DNA of 64,000 nucleotides from Mobula birostris (lineage: Eukaryota). Positions 3,203-64,000 of the stretch are shown here, in pieces. The notes beneath the pieces were generated by a model. The model saw only the letters and a list, made by a program, of their open reading frames with translations. It made no database searches and was not told the origin of the DNA. Position 1 is the first letter of the stretch. Each line of letters opens with the position of its first letter. The translations under genes and the position numbers were made by a program. The stretch covers positions 8,608,998 through 8,672,997 of the forward strand of contig NC_092374.1 of assembly GCF_030028105.1 (NCBI RefSeq), written 5' to 3'.

Positions 3203-3595
3203 CTCCCGGCGAGAGTGTCTCTGTGATGAATGGAACCGAGGGAGCTTCGGCCACGTTACCCTGTGTGTTCACACGGCCTCCGCAGAGCCTCACTGCACAC
3301 ACGGTGACGTGGATGAGGAAGGATCCCTACCGACACATCGTCACATTCAGGCGTTATGAAAATGGATCGTGGGCAGCGGAAAACGGAGTGACTCGGTACG
3401 AGCTCGTCGGGGACCCAGAGCGGGGAAACGCTTCGACCAGGATAAGGCAGCTGAGGGTGGGGGACAGTCACAGCTACCTGTGTCTGGCTGATTTCAGCGA
3501 CTTTACCCACCCTTACCCACACTTCTACGGACACCAGCTCGATCCCCCATATATCCATCTGCCCCAGAGTGAGATCCGGCTGCGGGTCAGACCAG
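3203..3595 (+). CDS. Ig V-set domain exon (V2) of SIGLEC15-like receptor, plus-strand paralog
   Basis: Acceptor ccttccctcAG ends at 3202 and donor GTAAGA starts at 3596. The exon is 393 nt, phase 1-1 and open. It has the V-set framework LPCVF...VTW...GNAS.RI..L...D...YLC...IRLRV. About 79% aa identity to 48474-48869 by manual alignment. Confidence 0.9.
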
Positions 3596-6109
3596 GTAAG
3601 AAATCATTGACACATTCTGCAGGATACGGGGAGGAAGCTGGAGGGAAGGGAGGAAGGGGAACAGGGATGGAAGACGCACCTAACGACGTTGAGGCGGCTG
3701 TAGCCTCGCCTCTGAGAGGCCAGCTTCTGCAGAGTAGGAATCTGGGCTGTCAGGTGGAGAGCGGGGGAGGGGGGCAGATGAAAGAGGAAGCGGGTTTAGA
3801 GAAGTGTTCAGTGAAACACGGAGAGGGCAAGAGAACCGGCTGGAATATCGCAGACCAAAAATACAACACTCTGTCGTTTTGTTTAATAATGGAGTAAATA
3901 ACCCTAACGAGAATTCGATAAGGGACTGTCCAATGTTCATCTGGGGTAACACGGAGAAACTTAGTAAAGCGGCGGGTTCTTGGTAAACCAGAGAGACAAC
4001 GAGTTGTCATTTTTCCCAAGTAAGGGAGAGTTTAACTAGAGTAAAGATATTATACAACAATCTTATAACTATTACATAATTACATATAATTAAAAGTTCC
4101 CGAGAATGTTTCCTGGAATACAACAGTTAACGTATGAAGACCGTTTGATGGATTTGGGACTGTAGAACATAGAAAATCTACAGCACATTACAGGCCCTTC
4201 GGCCCACAATATTGTGCCTACCATGTAACCTACTGCCTATAATTTCCCTACCGCATAGCCCTCTATTTTTCTAAGCTGCATGTATCTAAGAGTCTCTTAA
4301 AAGACCCTACTGTATCCGCCTCTACCACCTTCGCTGGCAGTTCATTCCACGCACCCACCACTCTCTGTGCTAAAATCCTACCTCTGACGTTCCCCTTGTA
4401 CCTACTTCCAAGCACTTTAAAACTGTGACCCCTCGTGTTACCCATTTCAGCCCTGGGAAAAGAGCCTCTGGCTATCCACATGATCTATGCCTCTCATCAT
4501 CTTATACAGCTCTATCAGGTCACCTCTCGTCCTCCGACACTCCAAGGAGAAAAGGCCAAGTTCACTCAACCTATTCTCATAAGGTATCCTCTCCAATCCA
4601 GGCACCATCCTTGTAATTCTCCTCGACATTCTCTCTGTAGTATCCACATCTTTCCTGTAATGAGGTGACCAGAACTGAACACGGTACTCCAAATGGGGTC
4701 TAAGTAAGGTCTTATATAGCTGTAACATTACCTCACGTCTCTTGAACTCAATCCCACTGTTGATAAAGTCCAACACACTGTATGCCTTCTTAACAACACT
4801 GTCAACCTGCGCAGCAGCTTTGAGTGTTCTATGGACATGGTCCCCAAGATCCCACTGATCCTCCGCACTGCCAAGAGTCTTACCATTAATATTATATTCT
4901 GTCTTCAAATTTGACCTACCGAAATGAACCACTTCACAGACGGTTAAACTCCGTCTGTCTCTTCTCAGCCCAGTTCTGCATCCTATCGATGTCCCGCTGT
5001 AACCTTTGACAACCCCCCAGAGTATCCACAACACCACCAACCTTTGTGCCATCAGCAAACTTACTAACCCACCCTTCTATTTCTTCATCCAGGTCATTGA
5101 TAGAGAGCACAAAGAGGAGGTGTCCCAGAGCAGATCCATGCAGAACACCACTGGTCACCATCCTCCATGCCAAATACGAGCCATGCACAACCACTCTTTG
5201 TTTTCTGTGGTAAAGCCAATTCTGGATACACGAAGCAAGATCTCCTTGGATGCCATGCCTCATTACTTTCTGAATGAGACTTGAATGGGGAAACTTATCA
5301 AGTGTCTTACTGAAATCCAAATACACTACGTCCACTGCTCTACTTTCATCAATGTGTTTTGTTACATCTTTAAAAAATTTAATCAGGTTTTCAAGGGCAG
5401 GGTCTGCCCTTGACAAAATTATGTTGACTATCCCTAATCAGTTTATTTCTGTCCAAATGCTCATAAATCCTTCCTCTTAGGATCTTCTCCAACAACTTGC
5501 TCACCACTGAAGTAAGACTTACTGGGCTATAATTTCCTGGATTATCTTTACTCCCTTTCTTGATCAAGGGAACAACGTTTGCAACGTTCCAATCCTCTGG
5601 TACTTCTCCAGTCCCTATTGATGATGCAAAGAGAATTGCCAGAGGCTCAGCAATCTCTTCCCTCGCTTCCCACAGTAACCCGGGGTATACCTCGTCCAGT
5701 CCCGGCCACCTATCTAACTTAATACCTTTCAAAAGCTCCAGCACATCCTCTTTCTTAATGTCTATACGCTCAAGCGTTTCAGTCCTCTTTAGGTCATCCC
5801 CATAATTGCCAGGGTCCTTTTCACTGGTGAATACTGAAATAAAGTATTCATTAAGTGCCTCTGCTACATCCTATGGCTCCATGCACATGTTTCTGTTCTC
5901 ACTCCTGATTAGGGCTATTCTCACACGGCTCATCCTCTTGCCCTTCACATGTTCGTAGAATGCCTGGGGTTATTCTTTATCCTGCCCGCCAAGGCCTTTT
6001 CATGGCCATTTCTAGCTCTCCTAATTTCATTCTTGAGTTCCATCCTGCCACCCTTGTAATTTTCTAGAGTTCTAACAGTACCTCGTTTCTTGAATCTTTC
6101 GAAAGCCTT

Positions 6110-9935: not shown

Positions 9936-12469
9936 ATCAAGCCCGTTGGACATGGGAAAACAGGGAACCAAAGGGAAACAGGGAGTCAACGGTCCGGATT
10001 GTTGCATAAACAAAGTAAATTTAAAGGGACCCCGATCTGGACCATGACAATGATCACAACAACCATATTATTATTGCACCATCCAGAATCTGCGTCCCAG
10101 TCTAATCCCTGATATATCTAAATTACTTTGGGGGGGGGGGTGTCTATAAAACACCCAGTAAAGTTATTGTCCCTTCCTGCTTCTGACTTCCACCCACAGA
10201 GACTCAACAGACAATCCCTCTCAGACCTCCTCCTTTCCTGCAGCCGTGCTTCTATCCCTGATTAGCAGTGCCACTCCTCCACCTCTTTTGCCTCCCTCCC
10301 TGTCCTTTTTGAAACATCTAAAGTCTGGCACACTCAGCAGCCATTACCGCCCCTGACTCATCCAAAACTCTGTAATGGCCACATCATCATAGTTCCACGT
10401 ATTGATCCACACTCTAAGTTCATTCGCCTTGCCCATGATACTCCTTGCATTAAAATAGACATATCTCAAACCATCTGGCTGAGTGCTTCTTTGCTTTATC
10501 ATCTACCTATCTTTCATCATAAACTTCCTACAAGCTGTCACTACTTGTGCGCCAAACGCCCCATCCTCTGCATCTTCACTTCGGTTCCCAATACCCTGCA
10601 AATCTGGTTTAAATCCTCCCCAACAGCATTAGCAAACCTCCCTCCCAGGATATTGGTTCCCCTCCAGTTCAGGTGCGACCTGTCCCACTTGTACAGGTCA
10701 CTCCTTCCCCAGAAAAGGTTCGAATCATCCAAGAACGGCAAATCCCTGCCCCCTGCACCATCTCCTCAGCCACTCATTCGTCTGTGCTATCTTCCTGTTC
10801 TGACCTTCACTAGCTGTGGCACCGGCAGTAATCCGGAGATTACCACCTTGGATGTCCTGCTCTTCAGCCTCCTTCCTAATTCCCTAAGCATATTGCGCAG
10901 GACGTCTACCCCTCTCCTGCATACGTCATTGGTTTCAATATGTACCACGATTCTGGCTGCTCACCCTCCCCGTCAAGAATATTCTACAATCCTGGACCCG
11001 AACACTCGGGAGGCAACCCACAATCCTGGTGTCTCTTTTGCTGCCACAGAATCCCCTATCTGTCCTATCAAGTCCCCTTTGACTATTGTTCCGCCCGACT
11101 TCACCCTTCCTTTCTGAGACTCGGAGCTAACCACAGTGCTATTGGTCTGCCTGTTGCTGCGTTGCCCAGATATGTCATCCCCCTCAGCAGTATCCAAAGG
11201 GTACTCAAAGTATACCTGTTGCTGAGGGGAATGGCCACAGGAGGAGGCTGCAGTGACTTCCTTCTCCCTTCACCTCTCTCGGTGTTCATCCATCTACTCC
11301 CCGAATTCTGCAGTCTGCGTGTAACCACCTGCTCAAAAGTCTTATCTATCGATTGCCCCGCCTACCGGATGATCCTTAGTTCGTCCAACTCCAGCTCCGG
11401 CTCCTTACTGCGTCTTTCATGAGCTGGAGTTGGCTGCACTTCCCGCAGGTGTAGTCATCAGGGAAACCATCAGGTTCCATGAATTCCCACATCCTACAGG
11501 GGGAGCATTCCACTGCCATATCTGCCATCCTGCCTGCACTGTACAATGGGCAACGAAGAACAACCCTACTAACCCGTGTCTTTGGGCTCGGCGCCTTCTT
11601 TGGCCTCTTGAGTCCGAGCCTTATGCTCTCACTCACACCGCTGGCCTACTCCCAGCAATAGCCGCCCCGCTTGCCCCTTCTATACTTTTATTTACTTCGC
11701 AGTGCTCTGCTCTCGACGCTGATTGGCCCTCTAGAATGTGCGAACTCCCGCGAAGCAATCCTTTTCTAATAGCTTCGCTGACTTGCGAGTCAACTCTTCG
11801 CAGTGCTCTGCACCCGACGCTGATTGGACTCTGGACTGCTTTCGCCAGTTTACTACAATGAGTGGGGCGGGAGAGGGGACTCTTTGAAACCTATCGACTA
11901 TTGAAAGGCCTGGATAGAGAGGACGTAGAGAGAGTTCATATAGTGGGGGAGACTAGAACAGCCTCAAAATAGAGAAACGGCCCTGAAGAGCAAGAACAAA
12001 GATGAAGAGGAATTTATTTAGCTAGAGGGTGGTGAATGTGTGGAAGTCATTGCCACAGGCGATTGTGGAGGTCGTCTTTGTTCTTTAAGTGGAGATTTAT
12101 AGGTTCCTGATTTGCAAGGACGTCAAAGTTTACGGCGAGATGGCGGGAGAATTGGGTTGAGACGAATAATCATCCATGATAGACTGGCGGAACTGACTCG
12201 ATGGGCCGAATGTCCTTTGTCTTATGATTTGTGGTCTTACTGTAGGTTTATTTTTTGTTCCAACGTTTAATTCCTGTCATTGTGATCTCTACATTCTTAG
12301 TAATATCTTTTTCTTGTTCCTTCGTACACGCGTAATCTTCCGTAGTTCTGTTAGTATAAATCTGCTAAATTATCTGTTCGTCTCCACATCTACAGATTAT
12401 AATCTGTGCAAATTATTGGTTTTTCCCCTTCGCCTGAGTCTGGATTGACCACTCTCACTTTCACTTCAG

Positions 12470-12569
12470 GGACAGACGCTTTTGCCGTGCTGATGTTGTG
12501 TATCCCACTCGGATTGAAAACTCTCGCCCTTTTAGTGATGGGCGCCGTTCTCTGCTGTGACAAACTCAG
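12470..12569 (+). CDS. Transmembrane exon of plus-strand SIGLEC15-like receptor (central Lys)
   Basis: Acceptor ttcacttcAG ends at 12469. Phase-1 frame reads GTDAFAVLMLCIPLGLKTLALLVMGAVLCCDKL. Donor CAG|GTACCG follows 12569; read-through would give RYRAQ* with TAA at 12583-12585. 95 of 100 nt identical to 47496-47595. Confidence 0.85.
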
Positions 12570-13439
12570 GTACCGTGCACAATAATGCTGAAGGCTCTTG
12601 CCGTGACGTGACTGAAATCTGATTCACTGAGACAGTCGGTGGGCGTTGGGAAGCGATTCGAACACTTGAAGCGTCCAGTAGGTATTCGCCTACGAACACC
12701 TCATTGCTGGCGTGGGAGCCTTTGATACTCAGAAAATGGTTGCTAAATTTTCTACATCATAACAGTGACTGCTTCAAACGTGTTTATTATATGTTTACAT
12801 TTTGAAAAACCTTTCGTATCGAAAATACCTGGTAAATACCACCGAATGATAGAAAAATGGAGGGATATGTAGGAGGGAAGGGCGCCACAGTAGCGTAGCG
12901 GCTCAGTAGTTTGTGTCCATTTCTCTTGCATTATGGACAATCAGTTTCCTGCTTAATTTACAACCGCTGTCTGTTATGTCCCCAGTACCTTGCATGTACT
13001 TAACACCCTGTGTACCCATTTCTCTCTGTTCCTTAATAGTCCAGGAGAACTAACATCCAAAGTCTATTCCATAAAAATTTCGCTGCAGCCAAGATATTGC
13101 ATCTGCCATTCATAAAAGGATCTCCCTTTAGAGCAAAGAATACAAGGAATTTATTGCCACAAACTGCTGTGGGTATATTTAAAGCGGAGATTGATAGGAT
13201 CTTGATTTGTAAGAGTGTCAAAGATTACGAGATGGGGGCATAAGAATGGGTTGGGAGGGACAATAACTCAACCACGATAGAATAGCAGAACAGAATAGAA
13301 GGACTGAATGCCCTAATTCTGCTCTGAAGTCTTCTGGTTTTCTGGACTTAATCTAAGTATCGTACTATTTGATAAATATTATACCATAGTCCGAGACCAT
13401 CCTCCTTTCTACCAACACTACCTACTGTATGCTTGGCAT

Positions 13440-14182
13440 TAGCCAAACCCCCCACGCCATCAAAAACACAGCATCCCTACAGTGAAGCATAGTGGTAGCT
13501 GCATCATGTTGTGGAGATGCTTAACTGCAGCAGGTCTCGGAAAGCTTGTGAGGGTAGAGGGTAAAATGAATGCAGCAAAAACCAGAGAAACCCTGGAGGA
13601 AAACCTGATGCAGTCTGCAAGAGAACTGCGACTTGGGAGAGGATTTGTTTTCCAGTAAGAAAATAATCCCAAATATAAAGCCACAGCTACACAGGAATGG
13701 CTTAAAAACAACAAAGTTAATGTCCTGGAGTGGCCAAATCAGAGTCCAGACCTCAATCCAATTGAGAATTTGTGGCTGGATTTGAAAAGGACTGTTCACT
13801 CACGACCCCCATGCAATCTGATCGTACTTGAGCAGTATTGTAAGGACAATTGCAGTGTCCAGATGTGTAAACTGGATAGAGAGCTATCCACACAAACTCA
13901 AGGCTGTAATTGCTGCCAAAGGTACATCTACTAAATACTAACTTAAAGGGGGGGGGGTGAGGTTTAATACGTATGCAATCAATTAATTTGTTTTTATATT
14001 TGTAATTAATTTAGATCACATTGTAGTGATTTGTTTTTACTTTGACATGAAAGAGTCTTTTTCTGTTGATTAGCGCTAAAAAGCCAAATTAAATCCACCG
14101 TGATTCAATGTTGTGAAACAATAAAACATGCAAACTTCCAACGGGGTGGGGGGGGGGAGGGTGAATACTTTCATAGGTACTG
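13440..14182 (+). mobile_element. Tc1-like DNA transposon 3' half, decayed
   Basis: Plus-strand frame reads PTVKHSGSCIMLW...FVFQ*ENNPKYKA...VLEWPNQSPDLNPIENLW (DD34E domain). The right end ...gtactg is followed by TA. Confidence 0.85.
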
Positions 14183-14408
14183 TATATTGTGTGTCACTGC
14201 AAAGCTTCCAATTCATTGTGTATCTGTGCTCATCTCCAATGTTGTTGTCAAACATTGATACCAACGATGATATTTATCCTGCGGAAAATCCCGTTCAAGT
14301 CTCGATCTAAATCCCTTCAAAGGCTGTAAGTGAATGGGGAGGCCGGATTAGGTCTTGTTGTACAACTGCCAGGGAGGTTCATGTTAACTGGTCTTGTTCT
14401 GTCCACAG

Positions 14409-14529
14409 AAAGGGAGGAGACTCATGCACCGCAGGAGGCAGAGAAGACCAGACTTCCAAGAACCAGGAACAGACGCCCCGCCCTCCTCGCTCCATCAGCT
14501 TACCGCACTCTGGGTGCGGGCATTTCTGA
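14409..14529 (+). CDS. Candidate cytoplasmic-tail exon of the plus-strand receptor (speculative)
   Basis: Branch-like gttaac, pyrimidine tract and CAG ending at 14408. The phase-2 frame joins the TM donor to give RKGGDSCTAGGREDQTSKNQEQTPRPPRSISLPHSGCGHF*. No clear homolog in the minus gene. Confidence 0.25.
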
Positions 14530-15669
14530 TCTTATTTCCAAATTGCTTTCTGATTCTCTCTTGTCTGTGTTTTATGGTTCCAGCCCCTCTGACATTCAGC
14601 AACTTTGCCCTTGTCACGCCCATATTGTCCTGTTAGAATTTTACACGGCTTTATGAGTTACCCTTCATTTCTCTCAACTCCAGGGACTATGGGGCCAACA
14701 GGCATCAGTTCTGCTCATCCTGGGATGCTCACTGCACTTGCTCTGTGATAAATCACCCTAACTCAAACAAATTTAAAAATACACAATTTTCAGATAGGGA
14801 ATCACTAAGGCTCTGTACAACTACAGCAAGACATCCTTTCTTCTGTTCTTAAATCACCTTGCGATGAATGTCAACGTAACAGTTGCATTCCAACCTGTCA
14901 CTGCTGAACTCCTGATTTGTACTGTGCAGTGGCATCTATTTCTTTCCTCCCTCCCACCATTCAAAAACAATTTGCATTGCCATATTTAGACTCATACTTG
15001 TGTACATTAAACTGCCTCTGCTATCCATTTGCCCTCTCGATTAACTGCTGCAAGTCACATAGAAAATTCATCCTCTCCTCCTGGCATTGCGCCATCCTCA
15101 GAGCTGGAGGTGTTAAATTTACTTCCTTCATCAACTTCCTTGCTGTCGACTTTGAACAACTGGGGCATAAACACAAATTCCTCTGGTTGGCCTCTAGTTA
15201 CTGCCTGCCACCTGGGAAAAGACTTGTTTCCTCATCCGCTTTGTTGTTAGAATCAGATGTTTTAAATCTAAAGTTCTTCCAGACGCAGACAGCATGGGAA
15301 TTCAAAATGCAGCCTAGCCCTTTTTGAGAAGAGGACCGGATGCAGGGTGCAGAGTGGCCTAGTTCTCTTCTAGCTCTTGCTCTATCACACCGAATAGACT
15401 AGTATAGCACACTCAAGGCCTGTCAGTCCATAATGTTGACACAACTTTTTAACCTACTCTAAGCTCAGTCTGACAGTCGCCTGACTCAGTAGAGTAGCGG
15501 TTATGGCATTGATCACCAGTCAGTGATGAAACTTCGCGGTTGAATTCCCACCGCTGTCTGGGCTCAGGGTGCTGGCTGGTTGGAAGAGGGTAGACTGACC
15601 CTGAGACAATCTGTACTGTCAGTCTCAGGGAAGAGTACCGATAGCTGATCCATTTTTCAATTTCATCAC

Positions 15670-17288
15670 ATACTCTGTAAAGTCCAGAACCTTGAGGAAA
15701 ATTAAAGTGGATAAATCCCCGGGACCTGACAGAGTGTTCCCTCGGACCTTGAAGGAGACTAGTGTTGAAATTGCAGGGGCCCTGGCAGAAATATTTAAAA
15801 TGTCGCTGTCTACAGGTGACGTGCCAGAAGATTGGAGAGTGGCTCATGTTGGTCCGTTGTTTAAAAAGGGATCAAAAATTAATCCGGGAAATTATAGGCC
15901 GGTAAATTTAACGTCAGTAGTATGTAAGTTATTGGAGGGAGTACTAAGAGACAGAATCTACAAACATTTGGATAGACATGGACTTATTAGGGAGAGTCAA
16001 CATGGCTTTGAGTGTGGTAGGTCATGTTCGACCAATCTATTGGAGTTTTTCGAGGAGGTTACCAGGAAAGTGGATGAAGGGAAGGCAGTGGATATTGTCT
16101 ACATGGACTTCAGTAAGGCCTTTGACAAAGTCCCTCATGGGAGGTTAGTTAGGAAAATTCAGTCGCTAGATATACATGGAGAGATGGTAAATTGGATTAG
16201 ACATTGGCTCAATGGAAGAAGCCAAAGAGTGGTAGTAGAGAATTGCTTCTCTGAGTGGGGCCTATGACTAGTGGTGTGCCACAGGGATCAGTGCTGGGTC
16301 CATTGTTATTTGTCATCTATATCAAGGATCTGGATGATAATGTGGCAAATTGGATCAGCAAATTTGCTGATGATAGAAAGATTGGAGGTGTAGTAGACAG
16401 TGAGGAAGGTTTTCAGAGCCTGCAAAGGGACTTGGACCAGCTGGAAGAATGGGCTGACAAATGGCAGATGGAGTTTAATACAGACAAGTGTGAGGTATTG
16501 CACTTTGGAAGGACAAACCAACGTAGAACATACAGGGTTATTGGTGAGACACCGAGGACTGCAGTAGAGCAGAGGGATCTGGGAATACAGATACAAAATT
16601 CCCTAAAAGTGGCGTCACAGGTAGATAGGTTCGTAAAGAGAGTTTTCGGTACATTGGCCTTTATTAATCACAGTATTGAGTATAAGAGCTGGAATGTTAT
16701 GATGAGGTTGTATAAGGCATTGGTGAGGCCGAATCTGGAATATTGTGTTCAGTTTTGGCCACCAAATTACAGGAAGGATATAAATAAGGTTGAAAGAGTG
16801 CAGAGAAGGTTTACAAGGATGTTGCCAGGACTTGAGAAACTCAGTTACAGAAAATGGTTGAATAGGTTAGGACTTTATTCCCTGGAGCGTAGAAGAATGA
16901 GGGGAGATTTGATAGAGGGATATAAAATTATGATGGGTATAGATAGAGTGAATGCAAGCAGGCTTTTTCCACTGAGGCAAGGGGAGAAAAAAAACCAGAG
17001 GACATGGGTTAAGGGTGAGGGGGGAAAAGTTTAAAAGGAACATTGGGGGGGGCTTCTTCACACAGAGTGTGGTGGGAGTATGGAATGAGCTGCCAGACGA
17101 GGTGGTAAATGCGGGTTCTTTTTAACATTTAAGAATAAATTGGACAGATACATGGATGGGAGGCGTATGGAGGGATATGGTCCGTGTTCAGGTCAGTGGG
17201 ACTAGGCAGAAAATGGTTCGGCACAGCCAAGAAGGGCCAAAAGGCCTGTTTCTGTGCTGTTGTTTTTCTATGGTTTTCTATGATTTCT
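15670..17288 (+). mobile_element. 5'-truncated CR1 LINE ORF2 (RT), frameshifted
   Basis: ORFs 15692-16267 and 16255-17034 with RT motifs. Tail ttttctatggttttctatgatttcta. Confidence 0.92.
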
Positions 17289-29139: not shown

Positions 29140-29305
29140 NNNNNNNNNNNNNNNNNNNNNNNNNNNNNNNNNNNNNNNNNNNNNNNNNNNNNNNNNNNNN
29201 NNNNNNNNNNNNNNNNNNNNNNNNNNNNNNNNNNNNNNNNNNNNNNNNNNNNNNNNNNNNNNNNNNNNNNNNNNNNNNNNNNNNNNNNNNNNNNNNNNNN
29301 NNNNN
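29140..29305. other. Assembly gap (166 N)
   Basis: Run of N adjacent to a short minus-oriented block M piece (about 29040-29139). Confidence 0.99.
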
Positions 29306-42601: not shown

Positions 42602-42734
42602 NNNNNNNNNNNNNNNNNNNNNNNNNNNNNNNNNNNNNNNNNNNNNNNNNNNNNNNNNNNNNNNNNNNNNNNNNNNNNNNNNNNNNNNNNNNNNNNNNNN
42701 NNNNNNNNNNNNNNNNNNNNNNNNNNNNNNNNNN
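42602..42734. other. Assembly gap (133 N)
   Basis: Run of N. Confidence 0.99.
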
Positions 42735-45328: not shown

Positions 45329-45506
45329 NNNNNNNNNNNNNNNNNNNNNNNNNNNNNNNNNNNNNNNNNNNNNNNNNNNNNNNNNNNNNNNNNNNNNNNN
45401 NNNNNNNNNNNNNNNNNNNNNNNNNNNNNNNNNNNNNNNNNNNNNNNNNNNNNNNNNNNNNNNNNNNNNNNNNNNNNNNNNNNNNNNNNNNNNNNNNNNN
45501 NNNNNN
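45329..45506. other. Assembly gap (178 N)
   Basis: Run of N. Confidence 0.99.
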
Positions 45507-45905: not shown

Positions 45906-46939
45906 TCGAAAGTCCGTGCCCAAAAGAAAGTGCCACCCGCGCCTAAGAGGCCTGGCCGTCCTGGAACGATCGATCGGCCGCTTTTGAAGAGATTTGGCTC
46001 GAGACTTGAACGGGATTTCCCACAAGATAAGTTTAATCGACAGTGTTAGTGTTTGACAACAAAACAGAAGTTGAGCCCAGAAACACAATCAATTGGAAGT
46101 TTTACGGTGAAGTAACGATATAGGAGGTGGTATTGATAGTAAGGAAGATGGTCTTAGGCTATAGGATAACTTTGATCAAATAGCAAGGCACTTATATTAA
46201 GACCATAAGACATAGGAGCAGAGTTCGGGCATTCGGCCCTCCTACTCTGCTCTGTCATTCCATCATGGTTGAGATAGTCTCCCTATCAACCCCATTCTCC
46301 TGTTCTCACGCCGTAAACCTGACACCCTTACGCAACGAGAACCTATCAATCTCCACTTTAAAAATACCCACGTCCGTACGTGGCAGTAAATGTCACAGGT
46401 TCACCACGCTCTGGCTGAGGAATTTCTTCGTATTCTCTGTTCTGAAGGGGCATCCTTCTGTGAATGGAAGATTGAAGTTATCCAGACTGTAGTGTAAGTA
46501 GACACTGAATGTTAGGTTTCTTGGGAAGTGAGTGCAAAATTCCTCGGAGCTGAGTAAACGCAACGTACTGGGGACAGGAACAGGTGGAGGTTGTTAATTA
46601 AGGAGGAACCTGATTTTCAATAATATAAGATAAATGGATTTCATTTGAATTCCCTTTGAGTGTTAATATGTTTGAAGTGGATACGATTACAGTTCAAACT
46701 GGATTACGGTGAAGGGAGACGGTTACAGAGATTCGGTTAGCAGGCAAACCTCTGAGGGATTTTGCCTCGTAGACGCTTTCTGTCGACCAAGAGAGCTGAT
46801 TCATCCTGGGCTTGGACTGAGTTAGCTGATCCCAGTGAAGGTGGATTGCTGAAAGTCGAGACTTTCCCGTATACTTCCTTCTGCTGTGTTCCAGGGCGAC
46901 TTTTTGCGTATATCAAAGATTACATATGTATTTAGAACG

Positions 46940-47495: not shown

Positions 47496-47595
47496 CTGAG
47501 TAAGTCACAGCAGAGAACGGCGCCCATCACTAACAGGGCGAGAGTTTTCAATCCGAGTGGGATACACAACATCAACTCGGCAAAAGCGTCTGTCC
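47496..47595 (-). CDS. Transmembrane exon of minus-strand SIGLEC15-like receptor (central Lys)
   Basis: Acceptor ttcacttcAG at 47597-47596. Reads GTDAFAELMLCIPLGLKTLALLVMGAVLCCDLL. Donor CAG|GTACTG; read-through gives RYCMK* with TAA at 47482-47480. Confidence 0.87.
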
Positions 47596-48473: not shown

Positions 48474-48869
48474 CAGGTCTGACCCGCAGCCTGATCTCAC
48501 TCTGGGACACATGGATATATGGGGGATTGAGATAGTGTCCGTAGAAGAAGTGTGGATAACGGTAGTCCGAGTCCCTGAACTCAGCCAGACACAGGTAACC
48601 GTGAGCGTCCTCAACAGCAGGCTGCTTTATCCTGGTCGAGGCGTTTCCCAGTTCTGGGTTCCCGACGAGCTCGTACCGAGTCACTCCGTTTTCCGCTGCC
48701 CACGATCCATGTCCTCGGTGCCTGAATGTGACGATGTGTCGGTAGGGATCCTTCCTCATCCACGTCACCGTGTGCGCGGTGAGGTTCTGCGGAGGCCCTG
48801 TGAACACATACGGTAACGTGGCTGAAGCTCCCTCAGTTCCAGTCATCACAGAGACACTGTCGCCGGGAG
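48474..48869 (-). CDS. Ig V-set exon V2 of minus-strand receptor (B-strand Cys replaced by Tyr)
   Basis: Acceptor ccttccctcAG at 48871-48870 and donor GTAAGA at 48473. The exon is 396 nt, phase 1-1 and open. Confidence 0.92.
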
Positions 48870-50119
48870 CTGAGGGAAGGACAGGCGATCTTCTGTCAGT
48901 TATATGTATATATCTATACATATTTAATCACACCTCCACCCATTAACCCATCCCAACCCCACCATCCCTCACTACAACGACATCCACGTCAGCCACTCCT
49001 CTCCACTGCCCCTCAGCATCCTTTATCACCCCATGCGCCGCTGACACATCCACTCCTCATTGAACCACTGACCATTCACTGTCCTCCTGAATTTTCATTT
49101 GCCCTGCTTCGACCTAGAGGAGTTCCTCCTGCCTAGAGTTGTTTTGTCACTATGATGTCCTGTCAGAATCACCTTATGTTCAAATACTCCTGCTCCTACC
49201 ATCACTTTCTGGAGTCTATGTACATAGGCTAATCCTTTCTACGTACATTTGTATATACGGCCACACTTAAATAGTCACTTGTGCATTGTGTTTTATATTT
49301 ATTATGCGTGTGTTTTGGTTGTTTTTTAATTGTGTTCGTTATGCTTATTGTGTTTTTTTATAAGAACATAGGAGCAGAATTGGGCCATTTGCCCGTCGCG
49401 TCCGCTCCGCCATTCCATCATGGCCGATTCATTTTCCTTCTCTGCTCCAATCTCATGCCTTTTCCCCGCATTCCTTCATGCCCTGACCAATCAATAATCT
49501 ATCAATCGAATATACCCAATGACGTGGCCTCCACAGTCGTCTGTGGCAATGAATTCCACAGATTCACCATTTTCAGGCTAAAGAACTTCCTTCTCATCCC
49601 CGTTCTAAAAAAACGCCCCTTTATTCTGACTGTGTGTCCTCCGATCTTAGACTCCCCCATTAAAGCAGATATCCACACTATCAAGCCCTTTCACTATTCA
49701 ATAGGATTAAATTAGACCACATCTCCTTCTTCTGAATTCCAATGAGTAGGGGCCCAGAGACATAAAATGGTCCCTGTATGACATCTTTCGTCCCAGAATA
49801 AGTTTCGTGAACCTCCTTTGAACCCTCCCCACTGTCAGAACATCTTTTCTTTGTAAGGGGCCCAAAACTGCTCATAATACTCGAGGTGAGACATTGACAG
49901 TGCTTTATAAAGTCTCAACATTACATTCTTGCTTTTATATTCCCGTCCTCTCGAAATGTATGCGAACATTGCATTTGCCTTCCTCACCACCGACTCAACC
50001 TGTAAATTCACTTTTAGGGAATCCTGCACGACGGCTTCCAAGCCCTATTCACCTCGGAATTTTTTTTAAATTTTTCCCTCTATTTAGAAGTTCTCCGACA
50101 CTTTTATTACTTCTAATAA

Positions 50120-50895
50120 ACGGGCAGACTGTTATTTAAATGGGGAAAGAATTCAAAGTTCTGAGATGCAACGGGACTTGTGAGTCCTCGTACAGGATAC
50201 CCTTAAGTTTAACCTTCAGGTTGAGTCGGTGATGAAGAAGGCGAATGCAATGTTGGCATTCATTTCTAGAGGGAATAGAGTATAGGAGCAGGGATGTGAT
50301 GTTGAGGCTCTATAAGGCACTGGTGAGACCTGATTTGGAGTCCTGTGGGCAGTTTTGGTCTCCTTATTTAAGAAAGGATGTGCTGACGTTGGAGAGGGTT
50401 CAGAGAAGATTCACTAGAATGATTCCGGGAATGAGGGTTGACATATGAGGAACGTTTGTCCGCTCTTGGACTGTATTCCTTGGAGTTTAGAAGAATGAGG
50501 GGAGACCTTATAGAAACATTTCGAATGTTGAAAGGCATGGACAGAGTGGATGTGCAAAGTTGCTTCCCATGATGGGGGAGTCTAGTACGAGAGGGCATAA
50601 CTTAAGGATTGAAGGGCGCCCATTCAGAACAGAGATGTGAAGAAATTTTTTTAGTCAGAGGGTGGTGAATCTATGGAATTTGTTGCCACGGGCAGCAATG
50701 GAGGCCAAGTCTTTGGATGTATTTAAAGCAGAGATTGATAGGTCTCTGAGTAGCCAGGGTATCAAAGGTTATGGTGAGAAGGCGGGGTAGTGGGACTAAA
50801 TGGGAGAGAATGGATCAGCTTATGATAAAATGGCGGAGCAGACGCGATGGGCCGAATAGCCGACTTCTGCTCCTTTGTCTTATGATCTTATGGTC
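50120..50895 (+). mobile_element. Young CR1 3' end in the V1-V2 intron
   Basis: YRSRDVMLRLYKALVRPDLE...RVQRRFTRMIPG, with a tcttatg-type tail. An older minus-strand CR1 fragment lies at about 49360-50060. Confidence 0.87.
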
Positions 50896-51548
50896 TAAGT
50901 ATTTGCCTTCTCTGTTCCCCTGGACTGTCGACTTTCATAATTCCGCTGCTTCGTTTTCTGGAGGCGGGGAAGGGATTGAAGATTTTCTGGGCACCGGGTA
51001 CATACAGGAGAGTTCCTGGATTTCCCTCGGAGTGACAGAGAGTTTACAGCTGGGAAGGAAGACATTCGGTCACTTGACAAACTCCCTGACTCTTCATTCT
51101 GTCTCTATTCTCAGAGTTTAAATACTATCAGATTATTCACCAAATCCCATGCCTCCGGCTTTTGCTGCTCTTAATAAAAGAAGCCAATATTGTCCAACTT
51201 CTGTTCGCAACCACTTTCCAATCTATTAAACCCCTTCTGAATACTCTCCAACGCTTCCATACCCTTCCTCTAATGTAGCTCCTAGATCAGCACAGAAATC
51301 TCCTAATGTCGGTTCTCCAAAGTTTTATAAAGCTGCAACACTTTTATCTCAAACTGCCCGACCAAATATACCAGAGCCAGCGTTTCATGCAGGTCCCCAA
51401 GCACACTGCCCAACAGGATTTACCGGAGAGGGATCCGGATCAGGGTCCCCGACACTTCACTCCCACATTTATTGATCAGGTTTGGACCATAGGGATCCTG
51501 TGGTCCTTGCGCTCTGAGGCAGCTACAGTACCTGAATTTGGTCCTCAC

Positions 51549-51935
51549 CTCTCACAGAGAGCTCCGTTAGAACCACTGTTCGAAATTTATTAGTATTGAG
51601 CTCCACCTGGCACCAATACCGACCACCGTCACTCCGGTTCAGACGCTGCACCATTATCGAAATGTCTCTTTGAATGAAGTTCTCCACGAATCCGAACCGC
51701 CCTCCTCCAGTCTCCTGTGTCGTTATTTCGCACCGGGAGCGGCCGGGACTGGGAAATGTGCAATTAAGCACCAGCTTTTTAGCACCTGATTCCACCCTGT
51801 ACCAGATCACGGAACCGAAAAGGGCGACGTCAGTGGGTGGGTGGGTGAAAGTCCACGGTAACACAGCTGAGGCCCCTTCCACCGCAGAGACCACATCAGC
51901 GCCGGACATTGACCAACCACGGATCGAATTGTCTG
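51549..51935 (-). CDS. Ig V-set exon V1, SIGLEC15-like N-terminal domain (B-strand Cys replaced by Trp)
   Basis: Acceptor (ct)nCAG|CAG with both AGs in phase 1, and donor G|GTGAGG at 51548. Reads WSMSGADVVSAVEGASAVLPWTFTHP...GSVIWYR...NCTFPSPGRSRC...GRF...DISIMVQRLNRSDGGRYWCQVE...TELSV, which matches my recollection of SIGLEC15 V-set motifs (WSM, LPCTFTHP, extra Cys pair, YFCRVE). Confidence 0.92.

Positions 51936-51965: not shown

Positions 51966-52022
<57 letters not shown>
51965..52022. repeat. Compound (GT)n(GA)n microsatellite just upstream of the V1 acceptor
   Basis: Read directly from the sequence. It is (CT)n(CA)n on the gene's sense strand. Confidence 0.95.
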
Positions 52023-52199
52023 GGTGGGGGAGGGAGAAGGAAAGATCAACAGCGGAGCAGCTGGTGAACAGACAGAGTTTCAGAAAAAAAAACTGAACCG
52101 GATCCTGGTCTGTAGCGGCACGGGATATGGTAACGTATCGGTGAGCCTGGATTTTATATCGACACAGCCAAGTGGGTTACTGACGTGCGGCGGGTCCGG

Positions 52200-53435: not shown

Positions 53436-53496
53436 TGTATCCCTGGACTGAGATGGATAGCAGGATCGTGCAGAGGCAAACCCGGAGGGAACGCAT
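53436..53496 (-). CDS. Signal-peptide exon of minus-strand receptor
   Basis: ATG at 53496, MRSLRVCLCTILLSISVQGY, then A|GTAAGT (consensus donor). Phase 1, compatible with the V1 acceptor. Confidence 0.85.
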
Positions 53497-54166
53497 CGCC
53501 AACGCGTTAGTCTGACATCCTTTGTGCATCCTAAAACTGAAATGCAGAAGTCGTGTCAAGTATTGGTCATTTCGTCAAAGATCCACCACCCTTATAAACG
53601 GGTTATAATTCGACAAATCACTGATTTCTAACTGAACAGGGTTGGTATGTTGCAAGAGCAGCACCTTGTGGGCATCACGCATACGCATTCAGTCGTGACC
53701 ATCTGAAAACGGAAGAAGCCCCTGAGCAGTGCGGAGAGTTCGGATGCGTTCCCAAAACTGAACTTGAGAGGGCAAAGGGTAGCAATAAAGTTTCAACAGC
53801 AGACATGATTAAGGAGGTTCCTAAAACATTTCAAAATTCATTTACTCTCCTTAACCAAAACGTGTGTACCTTTGGGATGCCCGGGGTGAATTCCAATTAT
53901 TTATTCAGACTTGCTCAAAAATTCTGAATTCCCACAAGCCATTTTAAGTGAGGGCAGCTCTGACAAAATGTTCTGCTTCTCCCCGGGTTTGAAGGGTTTA
54001 TGGATGGAGGTAATCAGTGTTAAAAGCTGGCTGAAGCAGTCACGGTGGTCGATTTACCGTTGTGTGATATCAATGGCTGCCATCCCAACCTATTGTCCCC
54101 TCAAATATCTCCAAATTAATTCCCATATTGAGCAAAATATAAAGGATGGGTAAAAATTGAACAGTA

Positions 54167-55637: not shown

Positions 55638-55781
55638 NNNNNNNNNNNNNNNNNNNNNNNNNNNNNNNNNNNNNNNNNNNNNNNNNNNNNNNNNNNNNNN
55701 NNNNNNNNNNNNNNNNNNNNNNNNNNNNNNNNNNNNNNNNNNNNNNNNNNNNNNNNNNNNNNNNNNNNNNNNNNNNNNNNN
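55638..55781. other. Assembly gap (144 N)
   Basis: Run of N at the tail of the preceding LINE. Confidence 0.99.
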
Positions 55782-62330: not shown

Positions 62331-64000
62331 ATAGTATCAATTCCAAAGAAGAAACATACAAATTAGCCAGAACAAGTGGCTCACCTGAGGACTAGGAGAA
62401 ATTCAGAGTCCAGCAGAGGAGGGCAAAGGGCTTAATTAGAAAGGGGAAAAAAGATTGAGAGAAAACTGGCAGGGAACATAAAAACTGACTGTAAAAGCTT
62501 TTATAGATATGTGAAAAGAAAAAGATTGGTTAAGACAAATGTAGGTCCCTTACAGACAGAAACAGGTGAATTGATTATGGGGAACAAGGACATGGCAGAC
62601 CAATTGCATAACGACTTTGGTTCTGTCTTCACTAAGGAGGACATAAATAATCTACCGGAAATAGTAGGGGACAGAGGGTCTAGTGAGATAGAGGAACTGA
62701 GGGAAATACATGTTAGTAGGGAAGTGGTGCTAGGTAAATTGAAGGGATTAAAGGAAGATAAATCCCCAAGGCCAGATGGTCTGCATCCCAGAGTGCTTAA
62801 GGAAGAAGCCCAAGATGTTGGACTAGTTCCTGAGGATTGGAAGGTGGCTAATGTAACCTCTCTTTTTAAAAAAGGAGGAGAGAGAAACCAGGGAATTATA
62901 GACCGGTTAGCCTAACATTGGTGGTGGGGAAAATGCCAGAGTCAGTTATCAAAGATGTGATAACAGCACATTTGGAAAGCGGTGAAATCATCGGACAAAG
63001 TCAGCATGGATTTGTGAAAGGAAAATCATGTCTGACGAATCTCATAGAATTTTTTGAGGATGTAACTAGTAGAGTGGATAGGGGAGAACCAGTGGATGTG
63101 GTATATTTGGATTTTCAAAAGGCTTTTGACAAGATCCCACACAGGAGATTAGTGTGCAAACTTAAAGCACACGGTATTGGGGGTAAGGTATTGATGTGGG
63201 TAGCGAATTGGTTGGCAGACAGGAAGCAAAGAGTGGGAATAAACGGGACCTTTTCAGAATGGCAGGCAGAGACTAGTGGGGTACCGCAAGGCTCAGTGCT
63301 GGGACCCCAGTTGTTTACAATATATATTAAGACTTAGACGAGGGAATTAAATGCAGCATCTCCATGTTTGCGGATGACACGAAGCTAGACGGCAGTGTTA
63401 GCTGTGAGGAGGATGCTAAGAGGATTCAGGGTGACTTGGATAAGTCAGGTGAGTGGGCAAATTCATGGCAGATGCAATTTAATGTGGATAAATGTGAGGT
63501 TATCCACTTTGGTGGCAAAAACAGGAAAACAGATTATTATCTGAATGGTGGCCGATTAGGAAAAGGGGAGGTGCAACGAGACCTGGGTGTCATTATACAC
63601 CAGTCATTGAAAGTGGGCATGCAGGTACAGCAGGCAGTGAAAAAGGCGAATGGTGTGCTGGCATTCATAGCAAGAGGATTCGAGTACAGGAGCAGGGAGG
63701 TACTACTGCAGTTGTACAAGGCCTTGGTGAGACCACACCTGGAATATTGTGTGCAGTTTTGGTCCCTTAATCTGAGGAAAGACATTCTTGCCATAATGGG
63801 AGTACAAAGAAGGTTCACCAGATTGATTCCTGGGATGGCAGGACTTTCATATGAGGAAAGACTGGATCGACTAGGCTTATACGTGTTGGAATTTAGAAGA
63901 TTGAGTTTGAATCTTATTGAAACATATAAAATCCTAAAGGGATTGGACAGGCTAGATGCAGGAAGATTGTTCCTGATGTTGGGGAAGTCCAGAACGAGGG
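62330..64000 (+). mobile_element. CR1 LINE ORF2 (RT), running off the window
   Basis: QHGFVKGKSCLTNLIEFFE...YLDFQKAFDKIPH...GVPQGSVLGPQLF. Confidence 0.92.

What the first reader, a model, noticed from the sequence alone, without database searches (positions are those of the whole stretch)
48808..51855. Both V domains of the minus gene lost the same canonical cysteine, by different single-base changes
Seen: V1 has LPWTF (TGG at 51853-51855) and V2 has LPYVF (TAT at 48808-48810), while the plus paralog keeps TGT at 3262-3264. The F-strand Cys is kept in both domains and all frames stay open. Known: the B-F disulfide is near-invariant in V-set domains. Inference: two independent hits at the same position, both to aromatic residues, fit either selection for non-canonical domains with free thiols (inter-domain or dimer disulfide) or early pseudogenisation or a misfolded decoy.
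Basis: partly seen in the sequence, partly recalled or inferred. Interest (0 to 1): 0.72.

Follow-up and report, generated by a model that had tools for sequence, protein, structure and literature searches.

The report
Manta Siglec-15-like receptor lacking core disulfides
A giant-manta immune-receptor gene related to Siglec-15 really does lack the usual core cysteine in both of its antibody-like domains, but the swap to an aromatic residue is old in one domain, recurs in relatives and is already known from human PILR receptors, so it is most likely a tolerated variant and not new chemistry.

Summary
The window is Mobula birostris DNA. The minus gene is NCBI protein XP_072113658 (326 aa): signal peptide, V1, V2, then a transmembrane helix with a lysine. 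All four exons are open and have AG/GT borders. V1 reads LPWTF (TGG) and V2 reads LPYVF (TAT), where paralogs have TGT. Both domains match human Siglec-15 best, and W59 and Y181 align with its C64.

The two losses differ in age. The M. hypostoma orthologue also has W, and Q in place of the sialic-acid arginine, but it keeps Cys in V2. The W-bearing V1 is the best-conserved V1 between the two mantas (5/118 differences against 12-17 in other pairs). V2 Tyr is specific to M. birostris.

Every replacement of this cysteine in the family is aromatic: W twice, Y three times, F once. Solved human PILR alpha and beta have Phe there with the F-strand Cys kept.

Best reading: a tolerated, PILR-like, disulfide-less V1 plus a young V2 change in a fast-evolving, still-coding gene. 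Early decay of the M. birostris copy is not excluded. RNA shows V2-TM splicing but no V1 exon. The other V2-Tyr gene has a frameshifted V1. Nothing supports a new disulfide. Interest is modest.

The scan's earlier notes cover this same locus and a sister cluster.

The parts
53436..53529 (-). Exon 1: start codon and signal peptide (MHKGCQTNALAMRSLRVCLCTILLSISVQGY; a second ATG at 53496 gives MRSLRV..., as in the paralogs). Donor is gtaagt.
   Evidence: tblastn of P0015; sequence; spliced translation equals P0015
51549..51935 (-). Exon 2: V1, a Siglec-15-type V-set domain. W59 (TGG, 51853-51855) replaces the B-strand Cys. C90 and C100 match the extra C'-C'' pair. C140 (F strand) is kept. Q141 replaces the sialic-acid Arg.
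   Evidence: Siglec-15 disulfides and R143 from PMC10264397
48474..48869 (-). Exon 3: V2, a second V-set domain. Y181 (TAT, 48808-48810) replaces the B-strand Cys. C254 (F strand) is its only Cys. P244 sits at a Leu that the other 45 aligned proteins all keep.
47496..47595 (-). Exon 4: stalk end, transmembrane helix with Lys309 (LMLCIPLGLKTLALLVMGAVLCC) and CDLL(R). Donor is gtactg. The last residue and the stop come from an exon that was not located.
   Evidence: V2-to-TM splice joint 47594/48473 (CT..AC) in RNA contigs of X10 and X17
3203..3591 (+). V2 exon of the tail-to-tail plus paralog (P0004), with Cys kept (TGT at 3262-3264). Its V1 lies about 0.8-1.2 kb before the window start, its TM exon at 12469-12570 and its tail exon at 14395-14526.

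Best explanation
The minus gene is an intact member of an elasmobranch-wide, locally expanded family of Siglec-15-like receptors. The architecture is signal peptide, V1, V2, a transmembrane helix with a lysine, and a minimal tail. This is the layout of receptors that signal through an adaptor of the DAP12 type (inferred from the Siglec-15 precedent). In V1 the B-strand half-cystine was replaced by Trp before M. birostris and M. hypostoma split. The domain has stayed strongly conserved since. It therefore most likely folds without the B-F disulfide, with the aromatic side chain filling the core beside the remaining, buried and reduced F-strand Cys, as in human PILR alpha and beta (inferred). 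The same V1 also lost the Arg that Siglec-15 needs for sialic acid. So it probably no longer binds sialic acid in the canonical way and has a shifted ligand (inferred). The V2 Cys-to-Tyr change is a separate, young event in the M. birostris lineage. It lies in a domain that evolves fast in this orthologue pair, and it is either tolerated in the same way or mildly destabilising. Shown here: the sequence, gene structure, homology, age of each change, recurrence in the family, and the PILR precedent. Inferred: folding without the disulfide, the state of the thiols, adaptor coupling, and ligand change.
For: Gene intact: four exons with AG/GT borders splice to P0015 residues 1-325. Family and homology: the best PDB sequence match of both domains is Siglec-15. 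About 10 paralogs lie on the same contig, with relatives in rays, skates and sharks. Age: orthologue P0211 (92% identical) has FPWTF and YWCQVEL but LPCEF in V2. Constraint: amino-acid differences between the two mantas in V1 are 5/118 for P0015/P0211, against 13/117, 17/117 and 12/110 for other pairs. The P0015 branch has dN/dS of 0.68 (V1) and 0.55 (V2), against 1.28 and 1.16 on the Cys-bearing sister branch. P0015 deviates at only 3 of 74 columns that are at least 90% conserved, which is mid-range for the family. Recurrence: the B-strand Cys is replaced by W in P0011 and P0012, Y in Hypanus P0028 and F in a Narcine clade. Trees need at least 4 changes in V1 and 2 in V2, and every one is aromatic although only 3 of the 7 non-stop single-base replacements of TGT are aromatic. 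Precedent: solved PILR alpha (4nfb, 3wuz) and PILR beta (4nfc, 4nfd) read ..SVEIPFSFYYPW.. and ..SVYFCRVELD... In a profile search, 11 further V domains have Phe at B with Cys at F. Transcription: RNA contigs in both species join V2 to the TM exon exactly at the exon borders. Locus-exact contigs cover intron 3 and the TM exon, and paralog exons are at most 87% identical. The AlphaFold2 model has pLDDT 84.2 and pTM 0.83 with both V folds.
Against: No RNA run holds the V1 exon. Only 6-12% of its sampled words are found, the same share in both species, and one paralog-like contig with TGT explains all V1 depth in X10. So a transcript carrying the Trp codon is not shown, and the RNA contigs over V2 stop 3 bases short of the Tyr codon. 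V2 of this orthologue pair changes at about the neutral rate: 8 non-synonymous changes, 4 synonymous changes and one codon indel in about 100 codons. V2 has also lost residues conserved in the rest of the family in both species: L244P and C181Y here, Y203D, V207A and L244S in P0211. The only other V2 with Tyr (P0021) belongs to a gene whose V1 exon is frameshifted. The M. hypostoma model starts inside V1 without a signal peptide. The paralog's tail exon has no counterpart in the minus arm. AlphaFold2 hardly responds to point changes: the Cys-bearing control P0004 scores 87.3, so the model says nothing about stability.
Confidence: 0.6

Rival explanations
1. Early pseudogenisation or relaxed constraint of the M. 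birostris copy. The gene still reads open but is losing function. V2 Cys-to-Tyr, L244P, G116E, the missing tail exon and the missing V1 RNA would be first signs of decay, on top of an older tolerated Trp.
For: V2 evolves at about the neutral rate between the two mantas and has lost conserved residues in both species. No V1-specific RNA words occur in any run. In X10, intron 2 has no coverage while intron 3 has, so transcripts may start at or near V2. The other V2-Tyr gene has a frameshifted V1. The essential Arg is gone. The tail exon is absent. With dS of about 0.05 since the species split, an open frame of 980 bases is only weak evidence of constraint.
Against: All four exons are open with canonical splice sites. 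Trp and Gln predate the species split and V1 is the most conserved V1 of the family. Branch dN/dS is below 1 and below that of the intact sister. There is no excess of deviations at conserved columns. V2-TM transcripts are spliced in both species.
Confidence: 0.25
2. Tyr181 is a private or polymorphic allele of the sequenced individual, or a short gene-conversion or multi-base event, and is not a fixed feature of the species.
For: Three of five adjacent residues differ from the orthologue (YVFTG against CEFTR), which looks like a clustered event. X1 contigs differ from the assembly 14 bases away, at 48823. An RNA contig of another sample carries a paralog-type patch (RYEN for HRGH) in the same exon. 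No second individual could be genotyped at the codon.
Against: No alternative letter is listed at 48808-48810 in the DNA contigs. The RYEN patch is flanked by at least 42 bases identical to paralogs, so it may be a chimeric contig.
Confidence: 0.15
3. Selection for free thiols: the unpaired F-strand cysteines C140 and C254 form a new inter-domain or inter-chain disulfide, or act as redox sensors.
For: Each domain is left with one unpaired Cys. This is the only family member with both domains affected.
Against: The F-strand Cys of a V-set domain points into the core (established knowledge of the fold; C64-C142 links the two sheets in Siglec-15). The same unpaired Cys is present in PILR alpha and beta and in single-loss relatives. 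The orthologue has a normal V2, so no paired design is conserved. One Narcine protein with Phe at B has also lost the F-strand Cys, as expected if that Cys is merely left over.
Confidence: 0.05
4. Assembly or base-call error at one or both codons.
For: Run X1 holds a contig with TGT at the V1 codon. The difference table is truncated, and the DNA runs are probably the assembly's own sample.
Against: The TGT contig carries paralog-type letters and a broken middle. A second contig agrees with TGG. The orthologue in another species has Trp. The same TGG is in P0011, and Tyr is in L020.
Confidence: 0.03

Closest known systems
Siglec-15 (human, PDB 7ZOZ)
   Same: It is the best sequence match of both V domains (E 1e-10 and 1.6e-7). 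V1 shares the LPxTFTHP and Y(F/W)CxVE(F/L) motifs, the extra C'-C'' cysteine pair (C95-C104) and a transmembrane lysine, with a short tail.
   Different: Siglec-15 has the C64-C142 disulfide and the essential R143; here these are W59 and Q141. Its second domain is described as C2-type; here it is a second V-set domain. Siglec-15 is a conserved single-copy gene (established knowledge), whereas here about 10 paralogs lie in two clusters, some with long Tyr-motif tails.
PILR alpha / PILR beta (human, PDB 4NFB, 3WUZ, 4NFC, 4NFD)
   Same: These are functional V-set domains with a Siglec-like fold (PMC13358205). They have an aromatic residue (Phe, IPFSF) at the B-strand Cys position and a kept F-strand Cys followed by Arg (YFCRVEL). 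PILR is a paired family with ITIM and DAP12-coupled forms.
   Different: PILR has a single V domain. PILR keeps the Arg, while P0015 has Gln (P0011 and P0012 keep Arg). PILR was not among the best 60 PDB sequence matches of V1, so direct kinship is not shown.
V-type Ig domains without the B-F disulfide (CD2 domain 1, CD58, SLAM-family V domains)
   Same: These are cell-surface V-type domains that fold stably with hydrophobic residues in place of the two cysteines (established knowledge, not tested here).
   Different: They usually lack both cysteines. Here only the B-strand partner is lost and the F-strand Cys stays.
Arginine-mutated Siglecs (for example human Siglec-XII)
   Same: These are Siglec-type V-set domains that lost the essential Arg while the gene stays open (established knowledge).
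   Different: They keep their disulfides. The lineage and domain layout also differ.

Membership tests
Siglec-15 | N-terminal V-set domain with significant sequence similarity to the Siglec-15 V-set | tested here: met
   phmmer against PDB: 7zoz_A E 9.8e-11 for V1; Pfam V-set E 1.5e-9
Siglec-15 | B-F inter-sheet disulfide (C64-C142) | tested here: not met
   W59 aligns with C64; C140 aligns with C142 and is kept
Siglec-15 | Extra C'-C'' disulfide (C95-C104) | tested here: met
   C90 and C100 are present and conserved in 46/46 and 44/46 family members. Their pairing is inferred.
Siglec-15 | Essential Arg on strand F (R143) for sialic acid | tested here: not met
   Q141 in P0015 and in orthologue P0211; Arg in 31 of 46 family members
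Siglec-15 | Second domain of C2-set type | tested here: not met
   The second domain scores as Pfam V-set (28.3 bits against a cut-off of 26). Its best PDB match is the V-set of Siglec-15.
Siglec-15 | Lysine in the transmembrane helix that couples to DAP12/DAP10 | tested here: met
   K309 in LGLKTLALLV. Its role is from PMC7226832. Coupling itself is not testable here.
PILR-type disulfide-less Siglec-fold V domain | Aromatic residue at the B-strand Cys position with the F-strand Cys retained | tested here: met
   P0015 LPWTF/YWC and LPYVF/YLC; PILR IPFSF/YFC in solved chains
PILR-type disulfide-less Siglec-fold V domain | Arg directly after the F-strand Cys | tested here: not met
   Gln in V1 and Leu in V2 of P0015
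PILR-type disulfide-less Siglec-fold V domain | Detectable sequence homology to PILR, and a single V domain | tested here: inconclusive
   PILR is not in the best 60 PDB sequence matches of V1. The architecture has two V domains.
Unprocessed pseudogene | Stop codons, frameshifts or broken splice sites | tested here: not met
   325 codons are open and all borders are AG/GT
Unprocessed pseudogene | Neutral evolution (dN/dS about 1) | tested here: inconclusive
   Branch dN/dS is 0.55-0.68. V1 shows 5/118 differences to the orthologue, but V2 is about neutral. The family baseline is itself about 1 or higher.
Unprocessed pseudogene | No proper transcript | tested here: inconclusive
   V2-TM spliced RNA is found in two species. 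No V1-specific RNA is found.

The most novel reading that the evidence does not exclude
Replacement of the B-strand cysteine by an aromatic residue is a selected, recurrent route in elasmobranch Siglec-15-like receptors. It would make V domains that do not depend on disulfide formation. P0015 of M. birostris would be the first natural tandem V-V receptor whose ectodomain has no inter-sheet disulfide at all. It would carry two buried free thiols and have lost sialic-acid binding, acting for example as a ligand-shifted activating receptor or a pathogen decoy.
Probability: 0.1. Interest if true: 0.55.

Novelty: new member of a known kind. Interest (0 to 1): 0.3.

Why it matters
The finding shows that loss of the 'invariant' Ig disulfide is not by itself a sign of decay. 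In this family it happened at least five times, always to Trp, Tyr or Phe. In one lineage it has been kept across a species split in the family's best-conserved V1. That gives a natural series for asking how aromatic packing substitutes for the B-F disulfide in Siglec-fold domains: Cys, Trp, Tyr or Phe at one core position, with or without the partner Cys. It also flags an expanded Siglec-15-like receptor family in rays and sharks that my literature searches did not find described. For genome annotation, the lesson is that such genes should not be called pseudogenes on the cysteine alone.

Tried and rejected
1. Base-call error was rejected for V1, because the orthologue has Trp and a DNA contig agrees. 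It is unlikely for V2.

2. M. hypostoma DNA could not be obtained. For P0012 the sample file was too large, and P0005 was not on record. Codon-level orthologue dN/dS was therefore limited to differences read off one RNA contig.

3. The PILR structure paper PMC4050567 is not held.

4. Foldseek of the two-domain model returned only generic two-V proteins such as JAML, VCBP3 and scFv. This did not bear on the cysteines.

5. AlphaFold2 on P0015 and on the Cys-bearing control P0004 gave similar confidence (84.2 against 87.3).

6. The RNA word search with the V1 exon found only paralog-shared words.

7. I asked whether gene conversion carried TGG between P0015 and P0011. Identity around the codon runs at most about 45 bases, and P0011 has the paralog-type base 15 bases upstream. 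Conversion and recurrent mutation cannot be told apart.

8. Literature searches for Siglec-15 in sharks or elasmobranchs found no description of this family.

Full report
**What is at the coordinates**

On the minus strand, 51853-51855 reads TGG inside ..GASAVLPWTFTHPP.. and 48808-48810 reads TAT inside ..GASATLPYVFTGPP... The plus-strand exon has TGT at 3262-3264 inside ..LPCVFTRPP... All three exons score as Pfam V-set.

The best solved-structure sequence match of both minus-strand domains is human Siglec-15 (7zoz): E 9.8e-11 for V1 and 1.6e-7 for V2. The alignments put Trp and Tyr on Siglec-15 C64 (LPCTFTHP). They put the retained Cys on C142 (YFCRVEF). In the crystal structure C64-C142 links the two sheets, C95-C104 ties the C'-C'' loop, and R143 is essential for sialic acid (PMC10264397).

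V1 keeps the C95/C104 equivalents and C142, but it has Trp for C64 and Gln for R143. V2 has a single Cys, on the F strand, followed by Leu.

**The gene**

The window is Mobula birostris, G000 contig C6:8608998-8672997. The minus gene is NCBI protein XP_072113658 (P0015, 326 aa).

Four exons have canonical AG/GT borders and splice exactly to residues 1-325:
- 53529-53436: signal peptide
- 51935-51549: V1
- 48869-48474: V2
- 47595-47496: transmembrane helix

The transmembrane helix carries Lys309 (LGLKTLALLV). This is the feature through which Siglec-15 couples to DAP12/DAP10 (PMC7226832). The tail is only a few residues long. The cytoplasmic exon of the plus paralog (14395-14526) has no counterpart in the minus arm, where homology stops near 45980. 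The last residue and the stop come from an exon I did not locate.

**The family**

The genome holds about 8 V1 and 10 V2 copies. All are on contig C6, in two clusters at 7.2-7.6 Mb and 8.5-8.72 Mb. Annotated relatives occur in rays, skates and sharks: Mobula hypostoma, Hypanus, Hemitrygon, Pristis, Leucoraja, Amblyraja, Rhinoraja, Narcine, Heterodontus, Pristiophorus and Heptranchias. Members have either a transmembrane Lys with a short tail, or a long tail with repeated DSCTYAxI motifs.

The plus paralog (P0004) lies tail to tail with the minus gene. It also has the transmembrane Lys, so the two are not an activating/inhibitory pair.

**How unusual is the cysteine loss?**

In a 46-protein alignment the V1 B-strand column is C in 40, W in 3, F in 2 and Y in 1. 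The V2 column is C in 45 and Y in 1.

V1 losses:
- Trp in P0015
- Trp in the neighbouring M. birostris gene P0011, with the same TGG codon
- Trp in M. hypostoma P0012
- Tyr in Hypanus P0028
- Phe in a Narcine clade

V2 losses:
- Tyr in P0015
- Tyr in M. birostris P0021 (L020)

Maximum-likelihood trees need at least 4 changes in V1 and 2 in V2. P0015 falls outside the Mobula clades that hold P0011/P0012 and P0021.

Every replacement is aromatic, although only 3 of the 7 non-stop single-base replacements of TGT are. For five independent events (3/7)^5 is about 0.014. This points to a filter for core-filling residues. The V2 cases are the easy G>A transition, so they carry less weight.

One Narcine protein with Phe at B has also lost the F-strand Cys.

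Outside the family, solved human PILR alpha (4nfb, 3wuz) and PILR beta (4nfc, 4nfd) read ..SVEIPFSFYYPW.. and ..SVYFCRVELD... That is the same arrangement, in functional sialic-acid receptors with a Siglec-like fold (PMC13358205). A profile search of 1.84 billion representatives gave 449 V-domain matches. Of these, 281 were C/C and 11 had Phe at B with Cys at F.

**Age of the two changes (the key result)**

The 90% cluster of P0015 holds one more protein. It is XP_062905820 of M. hypostoma (P0211), 92% identical.
- Its V1 reads ..AVFPWTFTHPP.. and YWCQVEL. Trp59 and Gln141 therefore predate the split of the two mantas.
- Its V2 reads ..TLPCEFTRPP... Tyr181 therefore arose only on the M. birostris side. 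It sits in a cluster of three changes within five residues (YVFTG against CEFTR).

Amino-acid differences between orthologue pairs of the two species:

| Pair | V1 | V2 |
|---|---|---|
| P0015/P0211 | 5/118 | 14/130, plus one codon indel |
| P0004/P0005 | 13/117 | 7/130 |
| P0011/P0012 | 17/117 | 15/129 |
| P0029/P0032 | 12/110 | 9/124 |

The Trp-bearing V1 is thus the best-conserved V1 of the family. V2 of this gene is among the fastest.

From an RNA contig of the orthologue I counted 8 non-synonymous changes, 4 synonymous changes and one in-frame codon loss in about 100 V2 codons. This is roughly neutral.

**Other tests of decay**

Nei-Gojobori distances among M. birostris paralogs give family-wide dN/dS of about 1.1-1.8. 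This could be diversifying selection, or conversion of silent sites. By three-taxon decomposition the P0015 branch has 0.68 (V1) and 0.55 (V2). The Cys-bearing sister branch has 1.28 and 1.16.

At 74 columns that are at least 90% conserved, P0015 deviates at three: G116E, C181Y and L244P. P0211 deviates at four: L57F, Y203D, V207A and L244S. The family range is 0-9.

On the other side, the only other V2-Tyr gene (P0021) has a one-base frameshift in its V1 exon, and its NCBI model starts at an internal Met.

**Reads**

*DNA.* Contigs of run X1 agree with TGG. A second contig with TGT also carries the paralog-type base at 51868 and aligns in two pieces, so it is from a paralog. A contig spans the Tyr codon and no change is listed there, but the table is truncated. 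X1 differs from the assembly at 48823, a synonymous change.

*RNA.* Contigs of X10 (M. birostris) and X17 join 47594/5 to 48473/4 with CT..AC ends. This is the V2-TM splice. X17 is M. hypostoma, because its translation equals P0211. Locus-exact X10 contigs also cover intron 3 and the TM exon.

Paralog exons are at most 87% identical, so these contigs belong to this gene or its orthologue.

*Limits.* Both V2 contigs stop just short of the Tyr codon. All X10 depth over V1 is explained by one paralog-like contig with TGT. No RNA run holds more than 12% of the V1 exon's sampled words. Expression of the Trp-bearing exon is therefore not shown.

The X10 contig carries RYEN where the assembly has HRGH. 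The patch is flanked by at least 42 bases identical to paralogs. It may be an allele made by conversion, or a chimeric contig.

**Structure models**

AlphaFold2 folds P0015:28-296 as two V domains (pLDDT 84.2, pTM 0.83). The Cys-bearing control P0004 gives 87.3 and 0.86. The difference is small and AlphaFold2 is insensitive to point changes, so this only confirms the fold class. Foldseek returns two-V proteins such as JAML and VCBP3.

**Verdict**

The reading of 'two independent hits, hence selection for free thiols or early pseudogenisation' needs splitting.

V1 Trp is an old, conserved variant that recurs in the family. It is of a kind already known from PILR and is best explained as a tolerated aromatic substitute for the disulfide. 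It sits in a domain that also gave up the sialic-acid Arg.

V2 Tyr is young and specific to M. birostris, in a fast-changing domain. It may be equally tolerated, may be polymorphic, or may be a first step of decay. Nothing supports a new disulfide.

Earlier first-reader notes of this scan already describe this locus as a V-V-TM(Lys) Siglec-15-like gene with an inverted paralog, and a similar gene 1.2 Mb away. My results agree with those descriptions.

Noticed in passing
G000 contig C6, 7.2-7.6 Mb and 8.5-8.72 Mb; loci L001-L031: An expanded family of Siglec-15-like V-V receptors. It has about 8 V1 and 10 V2 exons in two clusters. Members have either a transmembrane Lys with a short tail or a long tail with repeated DSCTYAxI tyrosine motifs. 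Relatives occur in rays, skates and sharks. My two literature searches found no description of it.
   Followed up: partly
window 3203-3591 and paralog loci L013-L021: Pairwise dN/dS among M. birostris paralogs is about 1 or higher (V2 of P0004 against the Mobula clade: 1.5-2.4). This suggests diversifying selection, or gene conversion that homogenises silent sites.
   Followed up: partly
beyond the window end, window-equivalent coordinates 91336-113796 (L034-L036): The neighbour gene P0011 has its signal exon at 91336-91398. A 137-base fragment 94% identical to the minus gene's V1 lies at 92874-93008. It starts right after the Trp codon position, at a (CT)n run. The real V1 (also TGG) is at 102536-102919, V2 at 111325-111720 and TM at 113695-113796. 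It looks like an inverted partial duplicate of the minus gene's 5' end feeding a hybrid gene.
   Followed up: partly
L007 (C6:7619152-7619513, minus) with L020: The V1 exon of the gene encoding P0021 has a one-base deletion right after FTHPP. Two frames are needed to read it, and the NCBI model starts at an internal Met without a signal peptide. Its V2 carries the other Cys-to-Tyr change.
   Followed up: yes
window 48708-48722: An RNA contig of run X10 has RYEN (7 base changes within 9 bases) where the assembly has HRGH and M. hypostoma has HQGN. It is either a gene-conversion allele or a chimeric de Bruijn contig through stretches shared with paralogs.
   Followed up: partly
window 48823: All X1 DNA contigs read C where the assembly has T (synonymous, TCA to TCG). 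So the read set and the assembly differ here.
   Followed up: no
window 12401-14324 against 47664-45980: The tail-to-tail arms of the plus and minus genes are inverted copies (66-79% identity) through the TM exon and about 1.9 kb beyond. Homology ends about 70 bases before the plus gene's tail-exon acceptor.
   Followed up: yes
window 51975-52040: A (CT)n(CA)n microsatellite lies directly upstream of the V1 acceptor. It is present upstream of V1 in all the paralogs aligned.
   Followed up: no
window-wide, for example 1088-2644, 4450-5870, 15605-17031, 62436-63999: Many open frames of LINE-type reverse transcriptases lie on both strands. Intron 2 of the minus gene (about 49400-50900) holds a very high-copy repeat, with contig depth over 200,000 in DNA runs. 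There are four N gaps: 29140-29305, 42602-42734, 45329-45506 and 55638-55781.
   Followed up: no
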